A stretch of 64,000 nucleotides of DNA from Bugula neritina (lineage: Eukaryota > Animalia > Bryozoa): positions 28,846,628-28,910,627 of the forward strand of contig OZ037767.1 of NCBI GenBank assembly GCA_964035545.1. The letters run 5' to 3'. Of the stretch, positions 1,127 through 37,348 are shown piece by piece. A program made the translations under genes and the position numbers. The notes beneath the pieces were generated by a model that did no database searches, was not told the DNA's origin, and saw nothing but the letters and a program-made list of their open reading frames with translations. Positions within the stretch are counted from its first letter, which is position 1. The number at the start of each line of letters is the position of its first letter.

Positions 1127-4100
1127 ATGCCACGAAAAAAGGCAGCCAGTGAAGCGGGTTCTGAACCTTCAACACAGCCAGTTAAAAAGTTCAAGCCAAA
1201 CCCAGAAGAGAATAGCAAAATGGAATCCAGTACCCGCCGTTCCCTTCGTACTCGTTCCTATGACGAGAATAATGTAGGAAACCAACCAGCCGCTCAGTCT
1301 AAGAAAGTTGCTGAGGTTAGTAGGCGTGACTCTGTAGTCTGCTGGTAATGCCTGTGCTGAATGTTGGTATGTAGAAATAAGCCGTTTTATTGGTTTTCAA
1401 GGCTGCCCTAAATCAACCAAGACGCAACGTTCTACAGGCTGCAGAAGCAAAGCCTGCTACAAGAGGCTCGGGATTTGTTGTGAAAAATCCGAGTGAAAAG
1501 AACTCGTGCCCTCTCGAGCTCTCCGTTCAAGTGACTCCGTGTGATATTCTAGAAAGACAACCAGCACTGCGTATGTGTTTCTACTATATTTATTCTAACA
1601 TTATATTTCTAAATATATTGCCTTCTCTTTATTTCAGTATTTGATTTATAACATTCTCACCTAAATTTCAGCATCAAGTAAAGAATCTGCATCCCGTAAA
1701 AGAAAGGTGAAAATATCACCAAAGTCTATTGAAAAAAGAACAAAATTAAGTGTAAGATTCCTATGATATAATTTCCTTTATCCTGACAGTATAATTTCTC
1801 ATTTTTACTATGTTATAATTTACTGTATATTTTGTTATATTTTGTTATATTTTCATTATTAGAACAGGTTTACGGTTTTGCTTACAGTTTCAGCTTATGT
1901 TTCCTTAAAACTCAAATGACCTTGACATATAACCCTTATTGTAGCCAACAGGAAGTCCAACGTCTTTGCTGGGGGAATTCCAAACAGTTCCATATTCAAA
2001 GAAGCATTCAGGAGACATGAGTAGCGGTGAGAACAGCGTACACTCTACAGATGCTACTCACACAGATGTCGTTGATGCCGATGTGTTGGACAATCTTAAA
2101 ACTAAATACGAAGCTGCAATATCACAACATAGAGTCAGCGGTCACTCAAGTCTTGCTGGACTGCCTGAGCAGCTGCCGGCGCTCAGCGCTGACCCTCTGT
2201 TCACTCGTCCAGCGGTTAAGTTGCACAAAGTTGATGTTAAGGTGAGACATCATGTTATGAAGTTCTAGTTGGTGACTCGTCATGTGAAACGTATTTAGAT
2301 TTTAGTAACGTGTCAAATATCTGTCCTGGATTTGTATTACTAACTCTTGTGGGTTTATAGTCACTATCTCTGCTGGAAATGGTTTTTTTAAAGCAGGATA
2401 AGGTTTTTTCTGATGTGGCACAGGAGCAATTATGGTTGGATGCTCTTCTTAACATCACTGCCGGTGTTTGTAGTCGAACTACTGACCTCGTGTTTACTAG
2501 ACCAGCACTCTGACCACCACACCACGACTGCTCCCTCTGGATTTGGATTATATATATTCTACTATATTCATTCTATTACTTGTTGCTTATTGAATTCTAA
2601 AGTGGTCACTCATGTTCTAGGTTGGAGCCAGTGTCTCTGTGATGACCTACAATATTCTCGCAGACTGTCACCTTCAAGCCTACAACTCCCAATACAGTTA
2701 CACAAGCGATGCACATCTTAGTTTAGACTTTAGGGGTTATAGAATTATCGAAGAGATCAAGCACTTAGACTGTGACGTTGTGTGCTTACAGGAAGTTGAC
2801 GATTTCTTCTATGAGAAAAGTTTAAGACCAGCTATGAAAATGTATGTGCAGTACACACCTATTAGCTTATCATATGTTATTCGCGTGATTATCCAGTGTC
2901 TTGGGTCTCACGTGGTTAGTTATTGTGTTGTAGGCTGGGCTATGAAGGAGTGTTTTACAGACGGAAAGGGGGTGGTTACCCTGAAGGAGCGTCCACTTTC
3001 TACAGAAGTAGCACGTACACATTAGACAGCCAACACGCCTGCTCATATGCTCAACTGGCTGACCAGGTAAGTTTACATAAACAATGTGTAAGCTGTCGTA
3101 GACTACAGTACTTGTCTCTAATGGAACCTGGTGGATATAGTAGTTGGTGTTAAAACAAACTTTTGTTAATTTGAGTTGTCTTCTCATGCAACCTGTTGGC
3201 CTTTATAAATTTGTGTTGGATTTGTTTTACACATTTGGGATCGTGATGGCTTAAATGCATATGCAGTCTCATGGTGTTAAATGCAATTAAGTTTTTTTAA
3301 ATTTTAAAACAACTTCAGTGTCAGTTCGAGGAGAAAAATATTTTCTTGTAAACTGTATAAAATATTGTAATATTTTTTAACGCAGAGCAATGGAGTTAGT
3401 TTTTAATGTCATCATGATGACAGTTGCTTTACTGTATACTAGTTTGTCTCTACCCAGCTGTCTGTTGGAATTCATGCAGTGCACAGTGTTTAGGGAAGTT
3501 TCGCTGCTGTTACAGGATATAGATAGGTCAGAACATTCAGAGGAAACCAAGCAGCTGCTAAGGCAGCACGTGAATAAGGAAGCTGTCTTACTCACATGTA
3601 AACTACGACACAAACCTACAGACAAACTTGTAGTTATAGGAAACACTCACCTCACGTGGACCAAGTTCACTGCTTTAGACATATCTTGTATGCAGGTACG
3701 GATATCATCACTCAATAATATAACCTCCATAAACTCTATCTTTACTAAAAATAAGTTCCTGCTATTGCTTGTTATGTAGAAGATTAAAGTTATGTTTGCT
3801 CTCTATTCGTTAGACAACAGGTCATATTTGTGTGAGTGTTTTGTAGCTACTAATGCATGCTGCCTTACATTCAGGCTCTGTCTGTTCAGTATGTTATGAA
3901 TATTTTATAATAAGTGAGAGTTGTCATTTCTGTTAACATTTAATGACTGTAACCACTTTCGGTAGTTCACACGTATATTGCAAGTGTAAGCACATTATCC
4001 ACACATCACCATGTATATTGTAGATGTACCATATTGCATATTATCCATATATAATGTATGTCGGTGTTAATTTGAGGTTTTCATTGTTGCTCACGAATTT

Positions 4101-5174
4101 TACCAGCTCTACTGGAGCAATTTCAACCGCTGTTCCATTAAAATAACATTAATACTTTCAACAGATGTGTTATGCATTCAAAGAAATGGACAGGCTATCA
4201 GAGCACGGTGAAATACCGATGGTGTTGGCAGGAGATTTTAACACTAGGAATTCGGATCCAGGATATCAGCTAGCCTTAGAGGGATATCTAAATGATGCTA
4301 GTCTAAAAACGTAAGTAGATTTTCATACCATAAGCATGTTGGTCTCATTTGATGGCAAGTAGAGGTTGTATTGTATGTTCAGTAGGTGATTATTAATTGT
4401 GTATTTTGATGTTTGGCTCTCACTAATTAAAGAATTAGCTAATCAGTTGAAAAATTTAAAGCTAATCTTAATAAAACTGAAACCTCCAGGCATGAGAGGA
4501 ACAAACTTTACTGCTAAAAACTAGCGTTGTGAATGAACTCAATTTTTTGTTGCAGATTACAGCAACTTAGAACAGTAACATATGCGGATGGAACAGAAAA
4601 GGCTCTCGTAGATCTTCTGTGGTGCGCTTTTCAACATCCGGCAAGGAACATTGCTTCTTCTTACTCTACTATAATGGTACGTTGATGACTATTTCAAAAC
4701 TCTGCCTATATGTACGAGTAGTGTTTTAGCTACTCGCACACTTTTTGTACAATGCCAGGTAATTTATCCTAAACAAATAGCTAGAGTATCTGCACTGTCA
4801 ATATGCAGAGCAAAGGCAAGTCAAGTTTAGCATTCGCCCTCCAAGGCTTCATGGTTGATTATAACACAGCCTGCCAGTTTGGCATTACAAGAGGTTAAAC
4901 AAAGTCTATTTGGCACAGTATTGCATTGATTTTTCAGTTTCATAATTTAGTGCATTATTAGATATTAAATCACAAAATGTCTTTTCTTCCTCTTCAGGGC
5001 AAAGAACCAGCAAAGACTAGCATTAACTTTGTAATGAACAGTGCAGTAGATTATATGTGGTCCAACAACATCCAGCCTCTGTCAGTAACTCAAACTAATA
5101 GCATATGCCACAAAATGCCAAACATTATATTCCCAAGTGATCACCTCAGCCTGCAGACAACATACGGCTTTTAG
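1127..5174 (+). CDS. EEP-superfamily deadenylase/phosphodiesterase (CCR4/Nocturnin/Angel/PDE12 group), 10 coding exons, ~570 aa with a basic low-complexity N-terminus
   Basis: Exons 1127-1315, 1402-1570, 1672-1751, 1945-2241, 2621-2841, 2934-3066, 3516-3695, 4165-4310, 4556-4676, 4998-5174 join in frame with GT-AG introns. EEP motifs in order: MTYNILAD, CLQEVD, GNTHL, LAGDFN, VDYMW, FPSDH. Subfamily cannot be resolved by eye. Confidence 0.88.
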
Positions 5175-5595
5175 CTTCTAGCTTGGCATACGAATGCGAA
5201 GGGTACTCACTAGTTTGTAGTCAATTTTAAACCTTTCTGTTCTCTTTGTTTTAAATGTATTGTTATTGCATCTAATTATATTCAAATTTGATATTTTGTA
5301 AAAAAAAATACACAAATTTATGAACAGAATTTTAATAAAACTATTATTATTCCAAGATGTAATTAAATGCTAAAAAACTGTGCACAGTATAGCAATATAG
5401 TATTTATAACAAACAGGTTATTTTTAAGAATAACTTTGGAATGAAACTAAAAATTTATCGGGTTGAGTGTTGAAATACAAAACAATATAATGCACTATAA
5501 AAGTAAATGTGATTGCACTAGACAGAGATTAGTCTATATACAACATGTACACCTTTGTACACTACAAATATGTACATAGCATCCATCATATGAAA

Positions 5596-8500
5596 TCATG
5601 GGGACTGTTCTTTTGACTTGAGTAAAGCCTTATGCTTCTTGCTCTGGTATTCCTGAGAGCTAGAGGGGGTGTCACTGGGGCGCTTGTTCCTTTTTGTGAC
5701 TGTCACTTTCATGGAACACCTTGTGAACTACAAATGAGAAAAGTGACCTTTTAGGCATTATATCCTCTCTTAGAGCTACTAACCAGCTATACCGCTAGTT
5801 ATATGGTATACACGGTATACACTGCCTACTTTTCGAGTCTCTGAAATAACAGAAACAAAATAAGAACGGAGACAAAACAGAACACAATGAAAGAAGTCTT
5901 GCGCGTTGCTGTTTTTGTTCAATCCATAGCAAAGATGAACAGCCTAGAGACTCGCCATAACCAAGCTCTTTTCATACTACAAAGGTTAAATAGTTACTGC
6001 TGCAGTCATACACCCAGTACGTATAGAAATTGTAATGAAAAAATAAAAACCTCAAACAGTCCAGGCTGAAATGCTCCAGAACCAAGGCTAACGAGTGATG
6101 GTTGAGACTGAGACAGTCGTTCCGACCCTTGGGAACTGACTGGAGAATCTTGACTATTGGATAGAGTGACCGTCTCCGAACATTGGTTGGTGCAAGCACC
6201 TTGGCGATAGCTTTTCAACGCGTTTAAGATTCTGGTGATAGTAGGCTTGGTCAGATTCATATTTTCCATGTCCTACAAGTATGTATTATGTAATGAAGTT
6301 CACTATGGCATAGGGAGGATAACTACAGATAAATATAGAGTTGTAACGAGATAACTCTATACTTAACCTGAATAATGGCTAATTGTCATACACAAGACAT
6401 TAACCACAGAAACCTGTTTTTCACGATTAAAATGACATTAGGAAAAGCATACATATGATAGACAATGAAATTTAACCTTTTAAGATTAACAGAAAATATA
6501 CCTTGACCGTAAAACTTTCTTGAGAGACGAGTTGAGCCATTGAGTGTAAGCCTGCCATTTGAAAATTGTCAATGTACGCACCCAGACCGAGTTTTTGAAG
6601 CCATCTACAGATAAAATTCATTGGACTATAAATTTTAGTTACATTTTACGTGTTAAGAACATACTAATTACATTTAATCTGTATTGTAAAAGTCACTATT
6701 TGTGGTAATGAGAAATATACAAATGATGAGGCACAACATACTCAGCTACACTATCTGTCCTCGATGCATCATCAGTCATATCATAGCCCCTACCAGCACC
6801 AGCCTGCCTCATATTGAACGAATCAGGAGCAGAGGAGAAGTTGAAAGCAGACGCCATATTGGGAAGCCCAGGCTGAACGCCTGCATAGCCCTGTGGAGCC
6901 GCACTGCAAGAGAAAACATAAAATGTGAGACGATGCACTCCGTAGTGTCTCCTCCCCGCCTCAACTCATCGGCTCCTTGCCAAAACAGACTACCAGTAGC
7001 TAACTTACAGATTAATCAGTAGTTAAGCCGCAGATTAAGTAAATGTAGTATACAAGAGAACAAAATAGAGCTAACTGATAGAACAGGTATTTACAACTAC
7101 AGTAAGCAATTTAGACGATGAGTTAAGGCTTCGTGGGAGTACAGCAAACCTGGTGACCGATTGAGCCTAAGACATCACTTGTGAAATCGAGCAGAATCCT
7201 GAACGCCGCGTGAAGCAGTAGAACGGGTGTGGCAGCGCTGATTGCGCGACGTCAGTCATTTTCTGCTTGACCGAGACTGTTACAGCAAACAGAATCCTGA
7301 CTGAATACGGAGGCCTACAGTCCAGCGCTGCAGTCAATCATTTCCTGTTGCCATGGCTACGCACTTCTGCTGCCATAACACGCCCCCAACTCAGTAATTT
7401 ATAGACCCATGCCTATTTAGTAATTTTAGTCATGTCCTCATTCAAGCTATACACAGATACATTGCCTCACGTTAAACTGTTGTTGTATAGTAATCCAATG
7501 GGCATGCTATGGCAGCTAGAAGTGTGTGGGCAACAGAGAGGCACAGAAACCTTAACACAGCCAAAGTTGAAGGTCATAAAACCCCTTCTAATAGGCTGAT
7601 AGTGGCTCCTGGTCGACCTTACGATCTGACCTAATATTGCCTCGTGCAAGGTCACCCTAGTCTCGTCACATACACCCTGCTACGTGAACACGAGAAAGAG
7701 TTTATCATACCTGTTGACTTCCTGCAAGCTACTAGAAATTTGACTAAAACCTGTCACGTTGTCAATGCATGAATGGTGAGCAATGAGTAAATAGGGAACT
7801 GCTTTTTATACTTTAATCTGCTATTAAGTTGCGCTGCATAACATAGAAAATATGAAAATAAAATAAAATGACTAATTATTTGGTAACATAATAAAAACAG
7901 CATATGCAGTGTAGTTGTGGTTGTTAGTTATTTACTGGGAGGGATTATAGTGAGTGGATGCAAATGCCAGCTATGAGGGGAAACTTCCAATGTTCAGAGT
8001 ATCTACCATGACTGCATATAGCTGTTAGTATGAAAATAGTTAAAATTTAGTTATTGTTCGGTAAAACTACTTAAATTAAAACTTGGGTTCCTTGTTGGCT
8101 CAGCCAACAACACAACACAATACTGAGTTGGCATACTGAGTATGAATAATGTGTAATTACTGGAATTCTAATTATTGCAGACTAGAGTGGAGTTGTCTAA
8201 TTTTAGAAAGATGACTAATGCTGCCGGCCCCGTCCAGGCGATTGTTGTCGCTATCGGAGTGCACGAGCAGACAGGCTATTCACTCGAAACCAGTTGAGTC
8301 AGCTGATACTTCCATAATATCACTAAAACATGGAGGCAGAATGAGTTTCAGTAGCGACTCAAACTTGGTCACGAATGATTTCACCAGAATTTTAATTAAA
8401 CTTTTATAAGTTCATATTTGTTTTAAACCAGATACAAAATAACTGTATTTAAAGACTAAGAATTAACCAGCAGCTAATTCAAGAATTTGATTTTCAAGCC

Positions 8501-11500
8501 AAAAATATTTATTCCATTCCCTGTTGCAATGCATGCATTATAGTTACTATATTGTGGATTATGCAGCCATAACACACTACCACTAGTACTTGTAACCGAC
8601 AGATATTACTTCACAGGAAGCCCCCAACAACTTATTGAAAGTCTGATGTAGGTTCATAGCTAGTTAGATCTAACACGTCTCAAGTCTAATGCAATGCGTA
8701 AAGGAATATTTAGCACACATTTCTCAACTAAATGAGAGCAGATAACTACAAGACTATCAACATAGGTGAGGGCAATAATTCTGCTAGAATTACACAATAT
8801 TCATTACATAAATACTAATAAATGTCTACATCTAATGGTGAACCAGCCATAAGCAAAGCCAAGTTCTGTAAGGTTCCTATAACAGGATCTAAAGCAGATG
8901 GTAGTCCACCATGGGAAGCACAGCATGGGAAACATAGCATTAGTGTTAATGCGTAACATTGGCTTCACTCAACTTATTTTACACGAAGTAAACTACACTT
9001 GAATTTTACATGAATCTACAGGACATGGCAAGTCAAGTCAATTAATATTTCCACAGCAACAATCACAGGATTTTCAATAATCAGGTAAAAACGATAATGG
9101 ATTAATTTCTGAACTGAAAAGCTCTTGGCAGTTAACACATACTCATTGCGAGGTCGCTGGTTAAACCTAGAGGATGTTTCAAGGGCATCTCTCAGCATGG
9201 CCAACACCTCGTAATTCCGTCGTCCTTTCACTTTCAGGGTGAAGGTTTCTTCCCTTGACTCGTCCCGAGGGCCTCTCATAATGCCATACATTGTTTGCTC
9301 GTGCACTGCTATAAAATAGACACGAAAATAAACACAGTGCTGTCACTCAGTGTCAGGTTCTCTCAACTCTCAAATATATACACCAGCTCAACTTAAACTG
9401 CTCATGTCATAGCAATAGACTTCGGAATAGAGTAAAAACTTTGTACAGATGAAAAAAATTAACCTGAATTCACATGTAGCCCGAGTTCTACATCAATTGC
9501 CTGAGGTACTCTCTCATAGATAGCCCTAGGAACTAGAAGATAGCCCTAGGAACTAGCAGACAATTCTAGGTACTAGAAGATAGCCCTAGGTACTAGAAGA
9601 TAGCCCTAGGAACTAGCAGATAGCCTTAGGAACTAGAAGTTAGCCCTAGGAACTAGAAGATAGCCCTAGGTACCCACCAACTTGAGAAGCAGGCTGCTGT
9701 GGTGGTGATGTATTGACAGACGTGTGTGAAGTAGATGGTCTATTAATAGAAGTAGTTTTGTGAGAAGGCGTTGTTTCGTTACGTTTCTGCCGCTGCAACT
9801 CTATTTTACCCTCTTCAGATTTCCGGTCTCTCCCCGGACAGGCACATATTCTGAGATCAATTGAAAGCCTGCCAAGCACCTCTTGATTCGAACTAAAATC
9901 ATATTTACTATTTTAAGAGCATCTTTTAAAAATTTCAATTATAAACTTTAAGTAAGGCTTCCCTTACTTGTATTAAATGGCAAACATACCACAAAGAAAC
10001 CTTGCATGCCTGTTTTATAGCGGAGAAACCACATAACACCCCCAATACTTACTTCTCTAGAGTGCAGACAACTCCCACTACTTACTTCTCCAGAGTGTAG
10101 ATAATAGACATCTCTCGCCGATTTGGACCTCCGACACAAGAGTTGAGACATTTGAAGGAGAAAAGGTAAGTCACCCAGGAGGTGCCGGCAGGGGGCGCGT
10201 CGTAGGGAGCAATCACGGCACACCGCCCGGTGCTCGAGTCCGTTACGTAACGGGCACCCTGGTTCTCACACCATATGAAGTGCTCTCTGTGGGGGATATT
10301 TGCTGTAAATACAACAGTTTGGCTGAAATCTATAACAATAATAATTTTCACACAAAAGTCCAACGTGTAACTGCATATAGCAGTTAGAATGAGAAATAAA
10401 AATTACACAGCAATCAGCTGGAACTATCAGATTTATACTGAATGGGCACCAAAACTCAAGTTCCAAATTAAAGAAATTAATCTATCCAGAAAATTTATGT
10501 GACATTTCACAAAATTGTAATATAAAAATGGAATATTTGACTGTCTACAAGCTGGTTAACAGAGACAGTGAATGATGTATATCCAACATACCACTTTCTG
10601 GAGCTTGAATGTGATTGGGGCACCTCTTCACCACGTCCTGCACATGCTCTGGTCTGCTGTAGATGGGCAGAGCGCGGATGTAGAGACCGTTAGCCACGCC
10701 GTCACAGTCTATACGGAACCTTACAGGGCACATGGCGTCTTTCTGAGCGTACAGCTTATTGGTCATATCTGAGAACTACAGAGCAATGTGTACTGGTGAA
10801 TATACAGAACACTGTGTACTGGTGAATATACAGAACACTGTGTACTGGTGAATATACAGAGCATCTGGCAGTGGTATGTTGTTCTAGAAGTACCCCAAGC
10901 TACATAGTACACCACTAGTTACTGAATGTAATCTTTCCAACCGCATACAGCCATTAGTGATGTGAGGAGAGGTGTCTGTCTATTCACAAATACAACTTAA
11001 CTTCTGTAGTACATGAGAAAATAAGGCACTCTTACTTATACACCCAACTCACTAGCTAACAGACTTTGTACTCTTAAAGTTTGGTGAGCTGTGTTGTGTA
11101 CTGTTGTGTATTGAAACTGTCTACTTGTCTACAATAAACTTACTGTCCAGGCTGTAGATTTGGTGTCTTTAGGCTGCTTTCCAAACTCAAACTGGAAGTT
11201 GTATGACCCTGGAAAGGGTTGACTGAAACACAAAATAACATAGCTCAATTTACGTGCTGCCATTATTTATTAACTCACTATGAGGCAGCACTTTATGAAG
11301 AAAATTTGTGAATGTCATTAAAATCTTCTGCCGCAAAATTTTAAAAAGATCAACTGTAAACATGTTCAAGCAATTTAGCAGCTTTACATGCTAATGGTGT
11401 GAGAAGTACCTGGATGGAATCAAAGACATGGGACTAGGGCTAAGGGAAGCCTGAGGCCTGCAGTAAACATTAGTTCCGGAATCGGGATAACTCCGCCCAT

Positions 11501-14500
11501 GGTCATCCTGTCCAAAGCTATTGAACTGCAAAACAAAGAAAAGTGTGTTAGTCAATTCTAAGAAGAGAAAACACAAATAAACAGAAGTCTACTCACTCTC
11601 TGGAGTATGGCTGTTCATGGAAATATTCTCTTTGATATAAGAGTAATGATAGAAAGTAGTTCCAGAACTTTGTTCCGTCCGATTTTACATAGTATTAAAC
11701 ATGTATTACATTATATGACATATAGCATATTATAGGACATGTATTATATTATATGACATATAGCATATTATATGACATATAGCATATTATAGGACATGTA
11801 TTACATTATATGACATATAGCATATTATAGGACATGTATTATATTATATGACATATAGCATATTATATGACATATAGCATATTATAGGACATGTATTACA
11901 TTATATGACATATAGCATATTATATGACATATAGTATATTATAGGACATGTATTACATTATATGACATATAGCATATTATAGGACATGTATTACATTATA
12001 TGACATATAGCATATTATAGGACATGTATTATATTATAGGACATATAGTATATTATATGACATGTAATATATTATATGACATGTAGTATATTATATGACA
12101 TATAGTATATTATATGACATGTAGTATATTATATGACATATAGTATATTATATGACATGTATTATATTATAGGACATATAGTATATTATATGACATGCAG
12201 TATATTATAGGACATATAGTATATTATATGACATGTAGTATATTATAGGACATGTAGTATATTATAGAACATGTAGTATATTATATGACATGTAGTATAT
12301 TATAGGACATGTAGTATATTATAGAACATGTAGTATATTATAGGACATGTAGCATATTAGACACACACAGCACGGGCAGCAGTTCACATTGACACTGGAA
12401 TGAACAGGTTACACCATGAAACACATGATTCGCACAAAAAAACTACATAAAAGAGTTCAAATGATGACATATAAAAGGCATGTATTAGTGAACTACACTA
12501 AAACAAACAGTACCTAAACATTTTGTTAATAACACAATATAGTGTTGAAAATTGGAGTTGCTCTTTCAATGAACATAATCTGTTCTATTGAATTGTTAAG
12601 TTGATAAATCTCTTCACAATTGATGTAGAAGCTTAACACCTATACTTCTTAGAGAATGAAAATATTGCACAACAGCTGCTATTCAAAGATTATGGGTAAT
12701 AAATTAAATATTATTTCACACAACATTTTAGAGAAAACTAGTTTGGGCCATCACTGTCAGAAAGAGGGGGGGGGGGCGAGTTCAACCCCGCCAGATGCTT
12801 GAAATAGTCTTACAATTTATTTAAACAACAGCTAACATCAACTGAAGAATAAGACACATGAAACATGAGAAAATAAACACACCCTGTCTATAATTAGAAA
12901 AGTACGGTGCACATACATAAAGCACACAGCACAACGTAGTATGAGAGAAGTGGTGTGAGAACACAATCCAGACACATACCCCATTAGTAGTTGACTCAGG
13001 TATAGCACCATTCCCATCCGATACACCTGGTTTGCACATGTTCAAATTAGATATTGAAGGAATTTTGAAAAAATAAAAAATCGATTTAAAATATATAAAC
13101 TATTTGTTGAAATAAATAGAAAATAAATAAACTATTCTAAAATATACCGAGTATTGAAAAAGCACCAACGTATGTCTGACTACCAACGAAGACAAATTTG
13201 AAATGACACCGGGCTAAACATATTAATCTAGAATGTAGTCAATCAAAGTATCATGCAATCAGCGCAGGCACGTTGCTCAAACATGCCCAAACATGTCATA
13301 TGCACAAACTATGTGACTAAACTCAACATGCCGTGTTCAAACTTGCCCAACCAATCAGATGCCGCTTTCAACGAGCATTGCATATTTCAGATCAATGAGG
13401 TCATCAATCGAGCCATTCTATTGGCTAACAAATAAAACTTGCCTGAACAAGTTTTCAATACCAAAGGAAGTAATGGCCAAGCAATAACCGAATGGCCTCA
13501 TCTTCAAAAACACATCCATCTAAATAATGGCGATTTTCAATAGCTACATGTCTATACAACAATGTCACCTATTAGCAGTTTTCATAAACCTATCAAAAGC
13601 TGTACAGAAGCAAAGCTACAGCTAAATAATAGACCATAGTGGTGAAAAGAAGACAGTTTCAGATAGTTGTAGGCTCCAGTTTTGTTCACATGGTCTGGTT
13701 ATAAACTTTACAGCTAGTATTTATAGTTGATAGGTGAAAAGCTTATATTTCAACTAAAAAACTTGTTAAAAAAATACATCCTGTATCACTGTAGTTTTGT
13801 GGTACTGTAGTACTGTATCATTGTTGTAATGTAGTGTTGTGGTACTGTAGTACTGTATTACTATAGTGTTGTGGTACTGTAGTACTGTATTACTGTATCA
13901 CTGTAGTGTTGTGGTACTGTAGTACTGTAGTACTGTATTACTGTATCACTGTAGTGTTGTGGTACTGTTGTACTGTATTATTAGAAAAGCACACAGCAGC
14001 CTAAGCAAGGCGCACAAAACTTTCTCATATTAACAGAAAACAATGCAGTAGGGAGACGACCAGAGGTCCAGTAATGCAAGACAGCAAAAGTTATGATTTG
14101 TGAGAATTCATTTAGACATGTAAAAAGCTTAGGATGTGAAAATTTTTCTGCTTTTGCACGCAAATATTATAGTATAATTCATATATAATATAAATAACAA
14201 GTGATATTATACACAACTTAAAATTTTTATTTAACTTGTGATGAAAATTGATGTGTGTATGATATGTGATTGTAACTCAAGTAACTTGCATTTTCACAGC
14301 CTATAAATTAATGTTATAGTTTTGTTCAAATAAAATCAATATTATGATTATAGCTACAGTTAAAGATGAGCCCGAGCAAAATTTTCCTGTACAGTCTGAA
14401 TACATGACATCTAGGAGATCAAATTTCCTAGCAACAACAAGAAACAAACGTTTAGAAAAAAGTTGATGTTAGCTGAGATAAACAGAGAGAAGCTGCATTT

Positions 14501-17500
14501 CAAAGACAGCACAATGTTGGATGAAAACATATTCTCTTTGTCTTACTTACTGTTTACAGGCAAGCAAGGTGCATTATGGAATAGAGAAATGAATATTGAA
14601 TATACCAAAGTTCAACAACCTTTTATTTAAAGAAAGATAAAGGAAACCCCGCATTGTAGTCCAACTTATGGTGATTAGTCAGGAACTGAATAAATACTTT
14701 AACTAAATACAAAGGCAGGGGAACTATAGAAATGGAGCTATAAAGAAAGGAAAAACAAATCAATCCTTTTAACTAGCACGAACTAGTTATAATATTGACA
14801 CTAATTTCTAATCTTTTGAAACATTATGAAAAGCTTCAACAGAGATATTGTAACTATTTTCACTTTATAAAATTGCATGGATGGAATGAACTCCGAAAAT
14901 AAAACATACAACTCAAAGACAAGCACATATATTCCATACAGCAAAATATTATTACAGTAAACCTTGCTACATTCTCATGTAACTTATGACTAGTTAATAC
15001 TATTATAAATGGCAAAGGTAAGCATGGTAACTCCATCATAGTGATAGAGTAGTAATTACACTAACACATAATATATTGCAGTTAGTAGTACTACATTTGC
15101 TAGTTATCAATATTTTCTATAATCATTACAAAGTAAATTATAACAGGAGAAGCAGAAAACCAGAGTATAACTGAGTGTTGCAGCAAACCCAATGATATTC
15201 ACGAAGGCAACTGATATATCTTTATATCTCTACACTTATCACATGTAAAAATAAATAACAAACAGAAAGATAACTAATAGTAATAGTAATACTATTTAGT
15301 TACTATGATAGAGAGTCAGAGTGATTTTTTAAGCATTACCATGACTGAATCAGATGATCCATGAGTAACAGAAAGCCTAACTGATTGAAACAAAATGAAT
15401 ATTACTACTACTACTACTAGTACTGCTACTACTAGTACTATAAGTATATATACGTATATACTTATAGTATTAGTATATTGTGTTGATCCATTTTAAAAGT
15501 TGTGGAAACTTACTTTGAATTTCTGTTCAGAATCAGGATGAGGAGGTGAAACTGAATCAAAAGTCAAACTGGTGACATTTTCTTCAGAGAGTGGAGTGTG
15601 AGAATCAAAGTGATAAAACGGTGAGTTATCAAAATCCAACACGTAAGTCATATTGAAAATACTAGTAATCACAAGTTACTAACAAAGCAAGTTGAGAAAG
15701 AAGTAGTACATAGAAGTAAATATTCAAGCCTAAGCACTAGAGGCGGATCTGAGATAGATCTATCCAACCATAAAAGACTAGATGAATAAACATGCCCAAC
15801 AAGTTGACTCATCATTGTATATCGGTTAGCATTACACACGTGGTTATTAGCGCTAAGCTCCGCCCAGCCGACCAATCATCACTGATGAATCAAATCAGTT
15901 ACACTCATTCTATACTCCACGGGTGAAAGATAGTAATGAGTCATTGTCAAGTCTAGACATGTTTACTGTTAAAATGGCAGATATTGCCGCCATTAGCAAT
16001 ATAAAAAGAAATTTTATAGGAAGTAAAGCATTTAATGCCAGTTGTAAAGAAAGGAAGGCCGAACATAATACATTATATCAATATGAAAAACTCAGTTGCT
16101 AATAGCATTATGTTGCACAGATTGCTACTGCGAAAAACTGCAAAGCATGACTTAACTTTATAATTTAGTACAGCAATGACATGCACCAACACCAAATTAT
16201 AACTAACAAAAGTTTAAGCTTTCTCGTGTAAATTTTCAAGTGAATAAAATAAAATGGCAATCATATAATATTGCTATCGCATGCATCCAATTCTGCAATG
16301 GCACAAAATGATTAGCCTTTGAAGTACAAGAGCCAACTATTGGCTATAAGTATGGATCCACAAAAGTCATGCTAAGACTGGAGCTACGGGCTTCCCACAT
16401 TCAACTCAAAAAGTGTAGTTTTAAAAAAAACTTGTGAAATTTCAGCCACTTTAGAGGTAAGAAACAAGATGCAAACAAAAACAAGAAAAAACTAGCTGAT
16501 TTCACTGCACAAATTTACAAGAATCCACCAAAGAGCAGCTCTGGAAGCTATTCAGTAACCATACATATTACAGTAACTACACATATTACAACAACTATAC
16601 ATATATATTACAGCAACTATACATATATTTTACACCAACTATACATATATTTTACACCAACTATGCATATAAATTACAGCAACTACACGTATGTTGCTAT
16701 AACTATACATATATTACAGTAACTATACATATATACTATAGTAACTATGTATATATTATAGTAACTATGTATATATTACAGTAAATATGCATATATTACA
16801 GCACTAGGGGTTCTTACAGGGCTTGAGAATTAAGTATATTGACTGCAGTGTTTCAGAAACAAACTTAATGCTATGTCAAGTATCGGATATATCAAATTCA
16901 GATGTCAGGGAGGAGAATTACGTAGCTCACCTGTGCTAGCATCTGTTGCTGTGATTGTATGAGCAATGATTGAGGTAGAATTTGTCTAGGGACCGTGGTG
17001 TTTAGCGACAATTCACATTTGGTAACCTCGTTGCCATCAGAGCTTTCAAATGTGTAGATTTCAGGGCTTTCAATAATTTTGGTGAATCTAAAAGGAGCAT
17101 TTATATTGAAAAACAATGCGATTAAAGTAAACTTAGCTTTGACTACAACTTAAAGGTAGCTAAAACTTTCAAATGTTGAAAATGTGTGAAAGAAGTCAGT
17201 GGTCGATTTAACAATTGCTGGTAAGCATGCTGCAAACGAGTTATAAGATATTACACCCTTACAGAACTAATTTCCCCACAGCATAGTGATGAGTTCTAAC
17301 ACAATACCGGCAAAGATGGATACTGTGAGAAACGGTGAGAAATGGTCATCAGTTCTAAACTTTAGTTCAAGTTGGAAACTTGAAACTAGGTTTATTTTAG
17401 TATGAAGAGAAATATCTTTTTAAATACCATGATTATAATTAGGTTTTTGAAACATTTTGCTGTTATAAAAACTTGCAGCAATATAGTGAGGAAACAGAGA

Positions 17501-19940
17501 CAGTCTAATTTATAACAAATATAGCCAAGTTTTCAAAATCAAAACTTCATTTCTAACCAAAACTGCAACCTTCAAATAGCTTGTAGAATCGTGGAAAACG
17601 GCATCAACTGAAACTAATGTGTTATTTACCATATTTAATAGTTTGCCTTGGAAACCAATGCATACACTATACACTTGTGGCTCTACTCAGATTGACACAA
17701 TTGAAACTATGCTAGTTGTGGATATTAAAAACATTATTTTAAATTTTTCTACTTTTTAATACTATATTACCTGCAAGAAAATGAACAATTCAATGTTTTA
17801 GTTTTAATATTATATTACTAGTACACAGTATTCATTGGTGTTTTATAGATACCTTATAGAAAATGGTATGGTAAAGTTGATGATGTTAAACATAAAAAAA
17901 TGAAAAAAATAGCTGAATTTCTTTACATTAAACTGCTAATTTTACAAGTTTACTTTAATATACAGCAAAGCATGGATAGTAAATTTCAAGTAGTAAAAAG
18001 CAGCTAGAAACCGTAGATTGTTAGCTGTCTAGCACATTGCAGTCAGTATTAGGATTCTGTCTTCTCATTTGATCCGGAGTACATTTCTCAGATAGTGGTG
18101 ATGGAAGCTGCTTAGTTGCTTTTCCTGAGTGGCGTAGGATGTCCAAGTTTTGCTAGAATAGAGTAGTGTGAACAATACGCATGCTCTGTATACATGCATC
18201 TTGGTGTTTGCTTACATGATGCTATTAGCCCACAATTACTTAAGTCGCTTGGACATTACTGCGGAAGCATTGACAATCTTTGGGTTGATCTCAGGCTCAA
18301 GGGAAAAATTTGTGCTGATACACCAGATAGAGAAATCTGTCAACCGAGTTGAACTCCTGACTTTTTATACAGATGCTTAGATGTGAGTCAGGACTCAGTC
18401 TCACTACTTCAGTCTTTTTTATGCTGATAGTAAAAGATTATAAAGCCCGAGTAGTCACAAACAGAAGCCAGATGGTTGATTAGCTTTTGAAATGCTTTCT
18501 ATGTGTGTGTTGCTAGAGCGGCATTATCTAGGTGTTGGCTCATAATCTGGCAAGGTTGTACAGCCTATTGTCAGACATGGTGTGTAGGTAGACTCCATTT
18601 TTTTTGTTATGGAAGGCCTTGGCCAAGAACATTAAAAAGAAGATTCCAAAGAAGGTTAGGGCCAGTACGTAGCCCTCCTTGACCTGTCATTAAATCAGAT
18701 CTAATGTTGAATCATTGTAACTCATGTGTGCTGAGCATATCTGCATGAAAGAACATGATGATAGAGTGCAGCTTGGGGAGAGGAACAGCCAATATTTTTC
18801 AGGATTTAAATTAGACCACTTCTGCTGATGAGATCAAGTGACTTCTAGATTTATGAAGGTAAGGAAAAGTGGCTTGTTTTATTTTGTTACTGTCTCACAA
18901 AGAAGATCATGCCAGTGTCAGAACTCCATCACTGCGCAATTGATAAGAAAAAGTTTTATACTGACATTTTACACCATAATCATTTTTATTTACTAATAAT
19001 TTACTCCATTACCAGACTGATCTAACTTTTAGAGCAGTGTTACTGTTAGTTACTTAATAGTAACACTAATTATTTCAATCTTCAGTGTAGAATAAGACTA
19101 ACTCAAATTATGAATTTGTCTTCCTATTCAATTATTGTTGAGTAAAATTAATCAAATTTAAACGAATGATTATGATATTAATTCAAAATTTATCAAATTT
19201 ATATAGTAATAATACAATTATGAATTATATTCAATTTTATATCGTTTATAATTATTTTTAACAAACAACTTCATAAAACTAATACTTACGGTAATACTAA
19301 TCATAACTATACTAATAACTATACTAAGTCTAATGGCAATGCTAATTCTAATAGTAATTGTAATACTAATAGACTATTGGTAAATGTAGTAATAATACTA
19401 ATACTTAATAGTAATAACACTAATAGTATTATTACATTCTGATTTACTATTACTATTAGTATTGCTTAGTATTACTATTAGTATTAGTATTACTATTACT
19501 AATAGTAATACTAATACTAATAGTATTAGTATTGGTATTAGATTTCATTATGACTCATCGCTAATTAGTAATTACACTGATGAGTGATGACTATCTCTAT
19601 CACTGACTATAAGTTTGAGTAGTCACCTTTCACCGCCGTGACTATAAGTTTGAGTAAAACTAAAAATAAGATTAAATGTTATCAACTAAAAGCAAAAGTA
19701 AAACAAATTGAAATTGAAATTGAAAATTTGAAACATTTTTTATAACTTAAACTTAAGTAAAAGTGTGTAAATAAATGTCTTATAATGAATTTAAAATACT
19801 TACTCAACAGTTGAATCTTGTTTCAAAGAATCTAATAGTTGAGTATATGTTTCTTGGCTTAATATTCTCATAGATTCATCGCAGGATTCTGTTCCACTTC
19901 CAGCTCCAGCGCTCAAACTCAAGTTAAGAGCCATATTCAT
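5596..19940 (-). CDS. TP73: p53/p63/p73-family transcription factor, full-length TA-alpha-like isoform (TAD, DBD, oligomerisation domain, SAM, TID/HOMO), 12 coding exons, 629 aa
   Basis: Exons 19940-19804, 17087-16931, 11525-11410, 11222-11144, 10775-10592, 10302-10086, 9892-9678, 9308-9143, 6903-6742, 6604-6502, 6272-6051, 5727-5596 sum to 1890 nt in frame. Motifs: LSQETY (box I), TKSTAWT, VVKRCPNH, CLNSCVGGPNRR, LRICACPGRDR, FTLKVKGRRNYEVL (OD), SVAEWLQKLGLGAYIDNF (SAM), PGLFEFTRCSMK (TID/HOMO-like). The symbol marks a co-ortholog of TP53/TP63/TP73. Confidence 0.93.
8280..8322 (-). CDS. Candidate alternative terminal exon of the p53-family gene (SAM-less isoform ending ...DDIMEVSADSTGFE*)
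   Basis: Acceptor ctcattctgcctccatgttttag, phase 2 matching the OD exon end at 9143, 13 further codons then TGA; minus-strand ATTAAA at 7812-7817. Confidence 0.45.
9517..9672. repeat. 20-bp minisatellite (tagccctaggaactagaaga) starting right at an intron donor
   Basis: About 7 tandem copies visible. Confidence 0.9.
11698..12358. repeat. ~18-19-bp AT-rich minisatellite (gacatgtagtatattatat variants)
   Basis: Dozens of degenerate tandem copies. Confidence 0.92.
12980..13039 (-). CDS. Candidate alternative first coding exon (DeltaN isoform B: MCKPGVSDGNGAIPESTTNG) of the p53-family gene
   Basis: ATG at 13039, exactly 20 codons, donor GG|gtatgt, phase 0 matching the exon starting at 11525; 240-415 bp downstream of a p53RE/CCAAT cluster. 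Confidence 0.6.
13279..13454. promoter_or_regulatory. Intronic promoter with p53-family response elements and CCAAT boxes
   Basis: AAACATGCCC-AAACATGTCA at 13279-13298 (19/20 to RRRCWWGYYY x2); AAACTTGCCT-GAACAAGTTT at 13435-13454 (20/20, no spacer); half-site AAACTTGCCC 13339-13348; CCAAT 13351-13355; ATTGG 13420-13424. Confidence 0.8.
13780..13980. repeat. Degenerate gtactgta/gtagtgtt minisatellite
   Basis: Visible tandem units. Confidence 0.8.
15514..15651 (-). CDS. Candidate alternative first coding exon (DeltaN isoform A: MTYVLDFDNSPFYHF...EQKFK, 46 aa) of the p53-family gene
   Basis: ATG at 15651, 46 open codons ending exactly at an AAA|gtaagt donor, phase 0 matching the exon starting at 11525; promoter motifs directly upstream. 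Confidence 0.7.
15788..15964. promoter_or_regulatory. Second intronic promoter with p53-family response element
   Basis: TGTCAAGTCT-AGACATGTTT at 15945-15964 (18/20, both CWWG cores, no spacer); perfect half-site AAACATGCCC 15788-15797; GC-box-like ctccgccc and CCAAT 15872-15876. Confidence 0.62.
16560..16800. repeat. AT-rich minisatellite (acagtaactatacatatatt variants)
   Basis: Visible tandem units. Confidence 0.85.
18050..18700 (+). mobile_element. Heavily decayed non-LTR (RTE-like) retrotransposon remnant in intron 1 of the p53-family gene
   Basis: GC-richer block; ORF 18168-18380 reads LVFAYMMLLAH...IFGLIS...K, resembling the RTE RT motifs LLFADDxxLxAH and FGLxIS. Confidence 0.45.
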
Positions 19941-34691: not shown

Positions 34692-35694
34692 AACACTAGT
34701 AGCAAATATATTTAAAAGATAATATGTGTACACTATGCCGATGAGAAGAGGCAGGGCATAATCAAGACTAAAGAAAAAGCCAAGAGATATTGAAAGTTTC
34801 AACAGCAAAACCTTAGTAGTTCTAGCTTCCACTTATTAGCTCAACAAATACATGTTAAACAGGCAAGTCGTTACACAACTAGCAATAATCCCAATGATAG
34901 TCATGCCATCATTATTATGATTTTAGGTTCAGGATTGATCTAGCTAGTCATGGTTATAAACAAACTGTAGCAGCAATCAATAGTATAATGATAAGCATAA
35001 TGGTGATGAATATTATAGTGAAACTGAATAGGTGGTCTACCTTTAGGTTTCACTTTGAATAATAAGTTTAACTTAAACTTATAATTATAACTAAAAGTAT
35101 TACCATTACTTTTACCATTTAAGTTACTATAACCAGTAGGCTATAGATCTATCATCTATCATTTAATTTTATGAGTAGACTACCATACTTGTACTAAGAG
35201 TAAGTTCCTATCAAATTCAATCAGCTACTAGGATATTATATATAATCTAATACTTAAACTAAGAGTAAACGGCCAAGTCTTACTGATAGTAATTATAAGG
35301 TTAAGACTAGTACTACTACTTATACTAATAGTAATAGACATAGTAAATGTAATAGTAAAAAGAGTAAGTGTAACTGTAGGCTTAAAAGTACACGGAAAGG
35401 CAAGACTAAGAGTAAGAGTAACTGCAAGTGCTCTTGCCTCGTAGACTGAGACTGTAGCATAAGGACAAAAATCAAAGGTCTGAGGGGGGTTGCTCAGCCC
35501 GAACTTTCACTTTCAGCATGAGCATTTATTTTATAAGCATTTAATTTTAAATTCCTGAGTATCAGTATAAAAATAAAATATTACTAAAATAGAAGTTCAT
35601 ACTGATAGTCATAGTCATAGTGATGCTGATAGTCATACTCGTAGTGATATCCATATTGATATTCAATTTCACATTGATATTCTGATTCATATTG

Positions 35695-37348
35695 CAACAT
35701 TGTACAATCAGGCTGTTTGCTGATGATGCCCTGGCTTATATGACTATAAGGAACAATGGTGACCAAATAAGTTTTCAATCTGGTATCAATAAATTAGCAG
35801 AGTGGGCCACTAGCAACCAAATGCAATTCAACATTGATAAGTGCCACATAACTAAATTCTGTATGCATAAAAACAAAAATACCAGGAATATTCCATATAA
35901 TTATAGCCTTTATAACAAGAATCTAAAGTGTGTTGACCCCTTCAAATATCTGGGAGTTACAATCAGTAACAACCTTAAGTGGGACCAGCACATTGCTAAC
36001 ATTACATCTAAAGCCAGCCAAAAATTAGGGATGATGAAAAGTGCTCTGTATAAAGCCCCAAAAAAAGTTAAACTAATTGCTTACATAACCTTTTGCAGAT
36101 CTATTTTGGATTATGCAGCGGAAATATGGGATCCTTATTTGGATAGACAGGTTGAACATCTTGAACAGGTGCAAAGAAAGGCCGTGCGATTTATTTGCAA
36201 TATGAAAGGACGTCAAGATAGTGTGAGTGAGAAACTAGAGCAGTTAAAACTAATGCCACTTAAAGGATTGCTCTATCTTGTCTAATAAATGGCCATTTAG
36301 GTCAAACACACATAATATTGTGTTTTTCTAAGCATGCATTGACAAAAAGCATTTGACCAAAGGTAGAAAAAGTTAGTTGAAGTTGAGGGTGTAGATTGGT
36401 AACAGCCAAAACGCCGATTTTGAAATGAGCTGGGAACTGTGACGTAACAGCGCCAGCATTCCTGCTGGTCACGTGACTATACAAATGAATAACTATAGAA
36501 ATATGACTGTGAGATGTGATCTTTCAGCTCGTAATTTGTATATTTATAGAAGTGCAAATGTGAATTATCTCAATCTATAGTTTTTTGACATTTTATATAA
36601 CATGTATGTGATACAATTAGGCCATATTTTGCTTGTAAACATTAGAAAAAAGCATTGCAAAAACATGCATTCTTTAGGATGAATGTCTGCGATCGATCTA
36701 AACTAGGTCAGATTGTGCAATATTACGGGCACACCAAAGCTGACCTATATAGCGCACTGTAACTGCTTGAGCGTTATTGGTTGATGTTGTGCTCAGCAAC
36801 CTTGAATACTAGCATTATAGTTAGCACGTGCAGCATAGTTACTGGCGTTCACACGTCACGTATTAGGCTATTCTTTTTCATGGCTGAAAATTTTACCTCC
36901 CTCAAAATTGGAATTTTGAAAAGCTGTTTTCTAGGCACATATCCCTTTGCAAAGTCACAATTGTTTGCATACACATCAGATTATAGTTCATAATTATAAT
37001 GTGATTGTAATAAACTAAGATTGAGCAATCCTTTAAACAGAGGAGGAAAACATCTAGGATTAAATTAATGTTGAGAATCTTGGGAAACTCTGCTCACTCG
37101 TCATTAGCCAAGTCCTTTGATAAACTTGTGGCCTGTGATTCCAAAACTAATGTCCAGACTAGATCTGCCACTAAAGAGTTACCACCTGCTCTTGCTGCGA
37201 GTAACAGTTTTCTGCACAACAGTTTTGTCCATCGCACTTCACGAGATTTAAGATCATAAGACTTGTAGTAATCAACAATCACAGGTCTGAAGACCTTAAC
37301 TTTCCCATATATAGGGGTCTAAAGGTTCAAACAAAACAAGAACAAGAA
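35695..37348 (+). mobile_element. 5'-truncated LINE (CR1/L2-like RT C-terminal half) split by a nested insertion
   Basis: LFADD, FNIDKC, FKYLGVTISNNLKW, IWDPY motifs in ORF 35692-36285. The frame resumes after 37036 (LMPLK-QRRKTSRIKL...RDLRS*, stop 37259). (AAGAAC)n tail at 37333-37350; possible TSD CATATTG at 35688-35694 and 37349-37355. Confidence 0.9.
36264..37032. mobile_element. Non-autonomous TTAA-site DNA transposon (Kolobok-like) nested in the LINE
   Basis: TTAA at 36260-36263 and 37033-37036; 16-bp TIR aggattgctc(t/a)atctt with one mismatch; excision restores the LINE ORF. Confidence 0.88.

What the first reader, a model, noticed from the sequence alone, without database searches (positions are those of the whole stretch)
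19824..19862. Transactivation box I has lost the MDM2-anchor residues (FxxLW to YxxLL)
Seen: exon 1 encodes LSQETYTQLLDSL, aligning to human p53 L14-SQETFSDLWKL-L26. The S15-Q kinase site, T18, L22 and L26 are kept, but F19 is Y and W23 is L. Established: F19/W23/L26 insert into the MDM2 pocket, and lineages that lost MDM2 (Drosophila, C. elegans) lack this motif, whereas molluscan p53 keeps it. Inference: this lineage has lost or rewired MDM2 control and may rely on the DeltaN feedback promoters instead.
Basis: partly seen in the sequence, partly recalled or inferred. Interest (0 to 1): 0.8.

Follow-up and report, generated by a model that had tools for sequence, protein, structure and literature searches.

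The report
Bryozoan p63-like activation motif, Y/L variant
The first coding exon of a bryozoan (Bugula) p53/p63/p73-type gene really does encode an activation motif in which two of the three residues that anchor vertebrate p53 to its inhibitor MDM2 are changed. I found no MDM2 gene in the genome, but similar changes occur in other animals, so this is a modest new example of a known kind of plasticity.

Summary
Observation confirmed. Window 19862-19824 (minus strand) encodes LSQETYTQLLDSL inside a 46-codon ATG-initiated ORF. The ORF has an in-frame stop 6 codons upstream and ends at a GTAAGT donor.

The exon is real. RefSeq isoform X1 of a second cheilostome bryozoan, Watersipora subatra, starts with the same exon (ILSQDTYAQMLESLRQDS). 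It has the same phase-2 intron position, the same 52-codon exon 2 and the same flanking genes. The core is 67% identical, as conserved as the DNA-binding domain, and differences are biased to third codon positions.

The organism is Bugula neritina or a very near relative. Its public gene models start at a downstream DeltaN exon and lack this exon.

Molluscs, nemerteans and a brachiopod keep F19/W23, so Y19/L23 is derived. However, W23->L also occurs in two annelids here, and the literature reports it in fish p63, where MDM2 exists. The motif alone therefore does not show MDM2 loss.

Genome-wide domain scans found no MDM2-like gene:
- SWIB: only BAF60 and eIF2D.
- RanBP fingers: all assigned to other genes.
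- RING: 70 loci inspected, none of the Mdm-specific C2H2C4 type.

Absence is likely (about 0.6) but not proven, because I could not run a search with a real invertebrate MDM2 sequence.

The parts
19804..19940 (-). Coding part of exon 1 (TA exon) of the p53/p63/p73-like gene. ATG at 19940, 45 codons plus 2 bases, phase-2 donor.
   Evidence: ORF; E=3e-7 to Watersipora isoform X1; same intron position and phase; sequence reproduced in run X1.
19824..19862 (-). TAD-I motif LSQETYTQLLDSL. Y is at the F19 position and L at the W23 position. S15-Q16, T18, L22 and L26 are kept.
   Evidence: alignments A1 and A2; pairwise hit to Mytilus p63 N-terminus on the same motif, E=0.001.
19798..19803 (-). Splice donor GTAAGT of intron 1.
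   Evidence: Watersipora has GA|GTAAGG at the homologous codon.
16931..17087 (-). Exon 2 (FTKIIESPEIYTFESSDGNEVTKCELSLNTTVPRQILPQSLLIQSQQQMLAQ). Acceptor ccttttag, donor CAG|GTGAGC. It has 52 full codons, as in Watersipora.
   Evidence: sequence; E=3.6e-6; same length and boundaries in Watersipora.
12980..13039 (-). Alternative DeltaN first exon (MCKPGVSDGNGAIPESTTNG). This is the start of both public Bugula neritina TP63 models and is homologous to the start of Watersipora isoform X3.
11412..11525 (-). Exon 3 (FNSFGQDDHG...SPSPMSLIPS), the linker shared by TA and DeltaN forms. Boundaries are approximate.
9650..11221 (-). Four DNA-binding-domain exons, at about 11221-11150, 10775-10593, 10306-10088 and 9894-9690.
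   Evidence: Pfam P53 PF00870; 58-84% identity to Watersipora; 99-100% to Bugula neritina TP63.
9148..9306 (-). Tetramerisation-domain exon (EETFTLKVKGRRNYEVLAMLRDALE).
   Evidence: Pfam P53_tetramer PF07710, E=5.4e-9.
5623..6866 (-). C-terminal exons, including the SAM domain (6612-6502, 6272-6051) and the tail (5739-5623).
   Evidence: ORFs; alignment to Watersipora residues 445-655, whose protein carries SAM_2.

Best explanation
This is the genuine first coding exon (TA exon) of the single p63/p73-like gene at this locus in the bryozoan Bugula neritina or a very near relative.

It encodes the N-terminal transactivation motif, an amphipathic phi-xx-phi-phi helix preceded by the SQ and T phospho-acceptor sites. 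In cheilostome bryozoans the motif has become SQ(E/D)TY.Q(L/M)L(D/E)SL. This version has been held under strong purifying selection since Bugula and Watersipora diverged.

The motif most likely still works as an activation helix that recruits co-activators (inferred). With Tyr for Phe19 and Leu for Trp23 it should be a poor ligand for a canonical MDM2 pocket (inferred from published binding data on similar natural variants).

The genome has no recognisable MDM2/MDM4 gene. The TA isoform is therefore probably not controlled by MDM2-type binding and ubiquitination, but by other means such as DeltaN isoforms from internal promoters or other E3 ligases (inferred).

Shown: the exon, its splicing pattern, its conservation and its derived state. 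Likely: the lack of MDM2. Inferred: the regulatory consequences.
For: Exon and motif:
- Sequence and ORF.
- Orthologous RefSeq TA isoform in Watersipora with the same exon 1, exon 2 and intron phase.
- Conserved synteny, with a WD40 gene divergent upstream and an Exo_endo_phos gene downstream.
- The TAD core is 67% identical, against 64/84/58% for DBD exons and 43% for the tetramerisation exon.
- Third-position bias of differences, 6/2/15.

Organism: 99-100% identity to TP63 [Bugula neritina] KAF6038344.1 and KAF6033918.1.

Derived state: molluscs, nemerteans and Lingula keep F..LW.

No MDM2:
- The PF02201 scan gives only BAF60, an eIF2D exon and a stop-ridden copy on a contaminant contig.
- PF00641 hits on the main contigs that I inspected read as RYBP/YAF2-like, TAB-like, NUP153-like, ZRANB1-like, ZRANB3 (HNH), RBM5/10-like and a two-finger gene. 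I did not fetch a tandem finger array in one 936-aa frame at C5:7.08 Mb. No finger lies near a RING hit.
- Of 91 PF13920 hits, I read 70 loci and none has the C2H2C4 arrangement. PMC6372010 says that arrangement is conserved in all known Mdm proteins.
- No PF08563 hit lies at either p53-family gene.

Literature:
- Zebrafish p63 has Leu at all three anchor positions and binds MDM2 at KD>100 uM.
- Plasticity of the motif across animals.
- A CBP/p300-like TAZ1/KIX gene and a Pirh2-like zf-CHY exon are present in the genome.
Against: - No transcript evidence from Bugula itself. No RNA run was served, and no TA-form Bugula protein is in the protein collections.
- MDM2 absence rests on six-frame, exon-by-exon Pfam scans. 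A SWIB domain split into exons of about 25 codons, or a RING split by an intron, would fall below the thresholds. For comparison, the 25-codon first DBD exon of this very gene was missed.
- 24 RING candidates were not scored, and I could not fetch 15 weak main-assembly hits.
- I could run no positive control on a genome known to have MDM2.
- W23->L occurs in annelids, a phylum reported to keep a four-domain MDM (PMC5543598). The substitution is therefore compatible with MDM2 being present.
- The strong conservation of S15-Q, T18, Y19, L23 and L26 could equally reflect binding to a co-evolved, divergent MDM2.
Confidence: 0.55

Rival explanations
1. MDM2 is present in bryozoans but was missed because it is divergent or finely split by introns. 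The Y19/L23 motif has co-evolved with its pocket, so MDM2 control is rewired rather than lost.
For: - The motif is as conserved as the DNA-binding domain, including T18 and S15-Q, which modulate MDM2 binding in vertebrates.
- The scans are exon-level and have limited sensitivity. One search missed a 25-codon exon, and 24 candidates went unscored.
- Other lophotrochozoan phyla keep MDM (PMC5543598).
- Two annelid p63-like proteins also have L23.
Against: - Three different Mdm domains were sought and none gave a candidate.
- The RING, reported as the most conserved Mdm domain with a diagnostic C2H2C4 pattern, was absent from the 70 loci I read.
- No zinc finger lies near a RING hit.
Confidence: 0.3
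2. This is an ordinary p63-type activation domain. p63-like TADs are weak or non-binders of MDM2 in many animals, whether or not the genome has MDM2. The Y/L changes would then be neutral or co-activator-driven drift within a phi-xx-phi-phi helix and would say nothing about MDM2.
For: - Fish p63 TADs usually carry Leu at position 23. Zebrafish p63 has Leu at all three anchor positions, with KD>100 uM. Human p63 binds weakly even with FxxxWxxL (PMC10303687).
- W23->L recurs in Owenia, Dimorphilus and an unidentified transcript, P0004.
- The gene has the p63/p73 architecture with a SAM domain and the WRAP73-like neighbour.
Against: - This reading does not explain why no MDM2-like gene is detectable at all.
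- It overlaps with the best explanation rather than excluding it.
- Y at position 19 is so far seen only in the two bryozoans.
Confidence: 0.12
3. The ORF is a chance open frame or a mis-predicted exon and is not part of the transcript.
For: - No Bugula RNA evidence.
- The public Bugula gene models omit it.
- Pfam P53_TAD does not match it.
Against: - Conserved at protein level with third-position-biased differences, with the same intron phase and the same 52-codon exon 2 in a second species' RefSeq model.
- Canonical ATG, upstream stop, donor and acceptor.
Confidence: 0.03

Closest known systems
TAD-I / MDM2-binding motif of p53, p63 and p73 (F19xxxW23xxL26; Pfam P53_TAD PF08563), as kept in mollusc, nemertean and brachiopod p63-like proteins
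   Same: - N-terminal position in a p53-family protein with DBD, tetramerisation and SAM domains.
- The SQ(E/D)T preface.
- Hydrophobic residues at i, i+3/4 and i+7 (Y19, L22/L23, L26).
- Encoded by a short first coding exon, followed by a long intron that carries a DeltaN start exon.
   Different: - Tyr replaces Phe19 and Leu replaces Trp23.
- There is no match to the Pfam model.
- The residues following the motif (KQDS...) differ from the ...TxxGxYT tail shared by other lophotrochozoans.
Fish p63 TAD (Leu at position 23; zebrafish LxxxLxxL) and the annelid p63-like TADs of Owenia and Dimorphilus (FxxLLxxL/V)
   Same: Natural W23->L variants of a p63-type TAD. Published zebrafish data show very low affinity for MDM2 (PMC10303687).
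   Different: - Those lineages have, or are reported to have, MDM2, whereas none was detectable here.
- Position 19 is Tyr only in the bryozoans.
Lineages reported to have lost the p53-binding domain of MDM or the whole gene (insects, crustaceans, nematodes, cnidarians; PMC5543598)
   Same: No recognisable MDM2 SWIB domain in the genome.
   Different: Those lineages also lost the TAD (coupled loss). The bryozoans keep a strongly conserved TAD exon.

Membership tests
p53/p63/p73 family gene | p53 DNA-binding domain (PF00870) | tested here: met
   exon-level hits up to 71 bits; 58-84% identity to Watersipora p63-like.
p53/p63/p73 family gene | Tetramerisation domain (PF07710), plus a C-terminal SAM domain for the p63/p73 type | tested here: met
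   (PF07710, E=5.4e-9). The SAM exons align to Watersipora residues 499-616, and that protein carries SAM_2. I did not scan the SAM domain directly against Pfam on the Bugula exons.
Canonical TAD-I / MDM2-binding motif (FxxxWxxL) | N-terminal location, with the SQ/T phospho-sites preceding the helix | tested here: met
Canonical TAD-I / MDM2-binding motif (FxxxWxxL) | Phe at position 19 | tested here: not met
   Tyr (codon TAT at 19847-19845), also Tyr in Watersipora.
Canonical TAD-I / MDM2-binding motif (FxxxWxxL) | Trp at position 23 | tested here: not met
   Leu (codon TTA at 19835-19833), also Leu in Watersipora.
Canonical TAD-I / MDM2-binding motif (FxxxWxxL) | Leu at position 26 | tested here: met
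Canonical TAD-I / MDM2-binding motif (FxxxWxxL) | Match to Pfam P53_TAD (PF08563) | tested here: not met
   No hit at E<=1 for the exon. The genome-wide scan gives no hit at either p53-family locus.
Canonical TAD-I / MDM2-binding motif (FxxxWxxL) | Binds the MDM2 SWIB pocket | not testable with these tools
   No MDM2 sequence was available by reference, so I ran no complex prediction.
MDM2/MDM4 in this genome | N-terminal SWIB/p53-binding domain (PF02201) | tested here: not met
   only BAF60, eIF2D and a contaminant-like pseudo-copy. Sensitivity is limited for finely split domains.
MDM2/MDM4 in this genome | C-terminal C2H2C4 RING (reported as conserved in all known Mdm, PMC6372010) | tested here: not met
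   none among the 70 loci I read. I could not fetch 15 weak hits, and 24 candidates were unscored.
MDM2/MDM4 in this genome | Central RanBP2-type zinc finger upstream of the RING | tested here: not met
   the main-assembly fingers I inspected belong to other gene types. I did not fetch the C5:7.08 Mb array. None lies within 100 kb of a PF13920 hit.

The most novel reading that the evidence does not exclude
Bryozoans have lost MDM2 altogether, yet keep a transactivation exon that is as conserved as the DNA-binding domain, now with a YxxLLxxL helix. This would be an exception to the reported rule that the TAD and the p53-binding domain of MDM are lost together. It would also show that the SQ-T-phi-xx-phi-phi module is maintained by co-activator or kinase interactions alone.
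Probability: 0.4. Interest if true: 0.45.

Novelty: new member of a known kind. Interest (0 to 1): 0.3.

Why it matters
The work adds a phylum, Bryozoa, that published p53-MDM2 co-evolution surveys did not cover (PMC5543598, PMC10303687). It supplies the TA exon missing from the public Bugula neritina TP63 models. It also offers a candidate case in which the activation motif is kept under strong constraint without a detectable MDM2.

If MDM2 is truly absent, the case helps separate the two selective pressures on TAD-I, co-activator binding and MDM2 binding. It does not open a new mechanism. Degenerate anchors and missing MDM2 are already documented in several lineages.

Tried and rejected
- **RNA evidence.** The look-up of sequencing runs returned only one DNA-type run. 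Laying it confirmed the DNA sequence of both exons but cannot show splicing. The 17117->19726 'joint' there has 20-letter sides and non-splice ends, so I disregard it.
- **Other proteins with the Watersipora N-terminus.** A search with residues 1-80 found nothing, because isoform X1 is not a cluster representative.
- **Full-length search with P0262.** It found no Bugula TA protein and no further bryozoans.
- **PDB search with the exon peptide.** Only one insignificant hit.
- **Candidate first exon of the second p53-family gene** (LFNQESFGEILKDL). It shows no BLASTP alignment to exon 1, so I report it only in passing.
- **Complex prediction.** I did not run it. No MDM2 candidate exists. The CBP/p300-like TAZ1 domain is split by an intron, and joining exons was outside the rules.
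- **Joined TA protein.** All comparisons were exon by exon.
Full report
**What is there**

The minus strand of window 19940-19804 is an ATG-initiated 46-codon open frame, MNMALNLSLSAGAGSGTESCDESMRILSQETYTQLLDSLKQDSTVE. An in-frame TGA lies six codons upstream of the ATG. The frame ends at a canonical donor, GA|GTAAGT. A canonical acceptor (ccttttag|A) at 17087 opens a 52-codon exon, FTKIIESPEIYTFESS...QQMLAQ, which ends at CAG|GTGAGC.

Downstream on the same strand lie:
- p53 DNA-binding-domain exons and a tetramerisation exon (Pfam; genome scan);
- SAM-domain exons.

The gene is therefore of the p63/p73 type and spans roughly 5.6-19.9 kb of the window.

**Which organism**

A HMMER search with one DBD exon found proteins 99% identical. 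The sources name them TP63 [Bugula neritina], KAF6038344.1 and KAF6033918.1. The genome (216 Mb, AT-rich) is therefore Bugula neritina or a very near relative, a cheilostome bryozoan. Both public models begin MCKPGVSDG.... That is a start exon at window 13039-12980, so they lack exons 1 and 2. The TA exon is not in the public annotation.

**Is the exon real?**

No RNA run was available, so I used comparison with a second species. The nearest annotated relative is the p63-like gene of Watersipora subatra, another cheilostome, at 62% identity. Its RefSeq isoform X1 (XP_067947721.1, P0262) begins MDAETDSCDETLKILSQDTYAQMLESLRQDSGCAE|FTKIINHPGTYTY....

Mapping it onto its own locus and onto the window gives the following:
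- There is a first coding exon ending in a split Glu codon, GA|G in Watersipora and GA|A in Bugula, so the intron is phase 2 in both.
- A 52-codon second exon begins FTKII in both species.
- The Bugula hits score E=3e-7 for exon 1 and E=3.6e-6 for exon 2 within the 64-kb window.

The 27-residue core is 67% identical, and all nine changes are conservative. That compares with 64, 84 and 58% for three DBD exons, 43% for the tetramerisation exon and 41% for exon 2. Nucleotide differences in the core fall 6/2/15 on codon positions 1/2/3, which is the signature of purifying selection on a coding sequence.

The flanking genes are also conserved: a WD40 gene divergent upstream and an Exo_endo_phos gene downstream (compare). 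Contigs of a DNA run reproduce both exons without differences.

Watersipora isoform X3 starts MCKPG..., like the public Bugula models. The downstream start exon is therefore a conserved DeltaN-type alternative.

**The motif in context**

I aligned the motif with the N-termini of p63-like proteins of Mytilus, Lottia, Liolophura, two nemerteans and the brachiopod Lingula. All of those read SQ(E/D)TF..(L/I)W..(L/I). The bryozoan motif reads SQETYTQLLDSL in Bugula and SQDTYAQMLESL in Watersipora.

S15-Q16, T18 and L26 are kept, and position 22 stays hydrophobic (L in Bugula, M in Watersipora). Position 19 is Tyr and position 23 is Leu in both bryozoans. The state is therefore derived and at least as old as the split between the Bugula and Watersipora lineages. 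The exon does not match Pfam P53_TAD.

- **W23->L is not unique to bryozoans.** The annelids Owenia (ISQDTFSELLAQL) and Dimorphilus (MSQETFEMLLKSV) have it, as does an unidentified transcript-derived protein, P0004 (LSQETLGFLLNEV). Only Tyr19 is so far specific to bryozoans.
- **Published measurements show the motif and MDM2 binding are loosely coupled.** Fish p63 usually has Leu23. Zebrafish p63 has Leu at all three anchor positions and binds zebrafish MDM2 at KD>100 uM, although MDM2 is present and binds p73. Mussel p53 has a perfect FxxxWxxL motif yet binds its own MDM2 at only 15 uM. The tick and Trichoplax pairs show no detectable binding (PMC10303687).

**Is there an MDM2?**

I searched the whole genome exon by exon with the three Pfam domains of Mdm proteins.

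- **SWIB (PF02201).** There were four hits:
  - a BAF60/SMARCD exon;
  - an exon of eIF2D/ligatin, identified by the SUI1-type exons downstream;
  - a spurious coiled-coil hit;
  - a copy full of in-frame TAA/TAG on a small contig, which looks like ciliate contamination.
- **RanBP2-type zinc fingers (PF00641).** There were 21 hits. Those on the main assembly that I inspected read as RYBP/YAF2-like, TAB-like, NUP153-like, a three-finger ZRANB1-like ORF, ZRANB3 (with its HNH motif), an RBM5/10-like gene and a two-finger gene. I did not fetch a tandem array of fingers inside one 936-aa frame at C5:7.08 Mb. None of the fingers lies within 100 kb of a RING hit.
- **RING (PF13920).** There were 91 hits at E<=0.01. 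I read the open frames of 70 loci. All are ordinary C3HC4 types with a 'C.H' third ligand. None has the C2H2C4 arrangement, which PMC6372010 describes as conserved in every known Mdm.

The scan therefore gives no candidate. It is still not proof of absence:
- Matches are per exon, and the first DBD exon of this very gene, about 25 codons, was missed.
- 24 RING candidates were not scored.
- I could not fetch 15 weak hits.
- No animal genome with a known MDM2 could be run as a positive control.
- I could not run a homology search with a genuine invertebrate MDM2, because no such sequence was available by reference.

I estimate about 0.6 that MDM2 is truly absent.

**How it most likely works**

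Shown: the gene has a conserved TA start exon and a conserved DeltaN start exon. The TA exon encodes a helix-forming phi-xx-phi-phi motif preceded by SQ and T sites.

Inferred from established knowledge of p53-family TADs: the motif recruits co-activators. A CBP/p300-like gene with TAZ1 and KIX is present. The SQ/T sites allow damage-kinase control.

Inferred from the published natural-variant data: with Tyr19 and Leu23 the motif would bind a canonical MDM2 pocket poorly.

If MDM2 is absent, turnover must use other routes. A Pirh2-like zf-CHY exon exists, and DeltaN isoforms could provide dominant-negative feedback. I tested none of this.

**Comparison and novelty**

The closest known things are:
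- the canonical TAD-I of p53/p63/p73, where the defining F19 and W23 are not met;
- the Leu23 TADs of fish p63 and annelid p63-like proteins;
- the MDM-less lineages (insects, crustaceans, nematodes, and the SWIB-less MDM of cnidarians; PMC5543598).

In those MDM-less lineages the TAD was lost together with the MDM p53-binding domain. The bryozoans would differ by keeping a strongly constrained TAD. That is the most novel reading still open (probability about 0.4). As it stands, this is a new, previously unsampled phylum showing a known kind of plasticity, plus a correction to the public gene model.

I made all comparisons exon by exon and by reference, and built no joined protein.

Noticed in passing
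G000:C3:13178899-13180235 (+); loci L085 and L086: There is a second, much more divergent p53-family gene in the genome, with DBD, tetramerisation and SAM exons. Its DBD reads IASPGRD where p53 proteins have CACPGRD. A candidate first exon 3.4 kb upstream (L085:6351-6485, MSENANHSDSELQLFNQESFGEILKDLEPDT..., GT donor) would keep F19 but also have L at position 23. It is not statistically supported.
   Followed up: partly
Small contigs of G000 (C57, C86, C189, C221, C284, C315 and others): RING and SWIB matches on these contigs have only TAA/TAG 'stops' in frame. This suggests contigs from a ciliate (alternative genetic code) in the assembly. An earlier follow-up note (s1-437862) also speaks of a ciliate gene in this genome.
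   Followed up: no
window 12980-13039 (-): The public Bugula neritina TP63 models (KAF6038344.1, KAF6033918.1) start here (MCKPGVSDG...). Watersipora isoform X3 starts with the homologous exon. Watersipora isoform X2 uses yet another first exon (MQLKYSDMSYHLGSDVTPYFEPLVDRSALLESPQYHTEFT).
   Followed up: partly
window 1100-5200 (+), 5600-19940 (-), beyond 20000 (+); L087: The gene order PDE12-like exo/endonuclease, then the p63-like gene, then a divergent WD40 (WRAP73-like) gene is the same in Bugula and Watersipora. It recalls the WRAP73-TP73 head-to-head pair of vertebrates.
   Followed up: partly
P0004 (Logan transcript assemblies, organism unknown): An 855-residue protein has two complete p53 DBD units in tandem and one SAM domain. 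Its N-terminal motif LSQETLGFLLNEV has Leu at both anchor positions 19 and 23.
   Followed up: no
window 19416-19524: An AT-rich microsatellite-like repeat in intron 1 attracts an enormous depth of contigs and many spurious joints in run X1.
   Followed up: no
window 57205-58854 (+) and 35692-36285 (+): There is an intact 549-codon hAT-type transposase-like ORF and a reverse-transcriptase-like ORF fragment.
   Followed up: no
G000:C7:470092-470253 (L088) and G000:C1:12203004-12203159: A CBP/p300-like gene has TAZ1 (split by an intron) and KIX exons. There is also a Pirh2/RCHY1-like zf-CHY exon. Both are possible partners or regulators of the p63-like protein. I did not test either.
   Followed up: no
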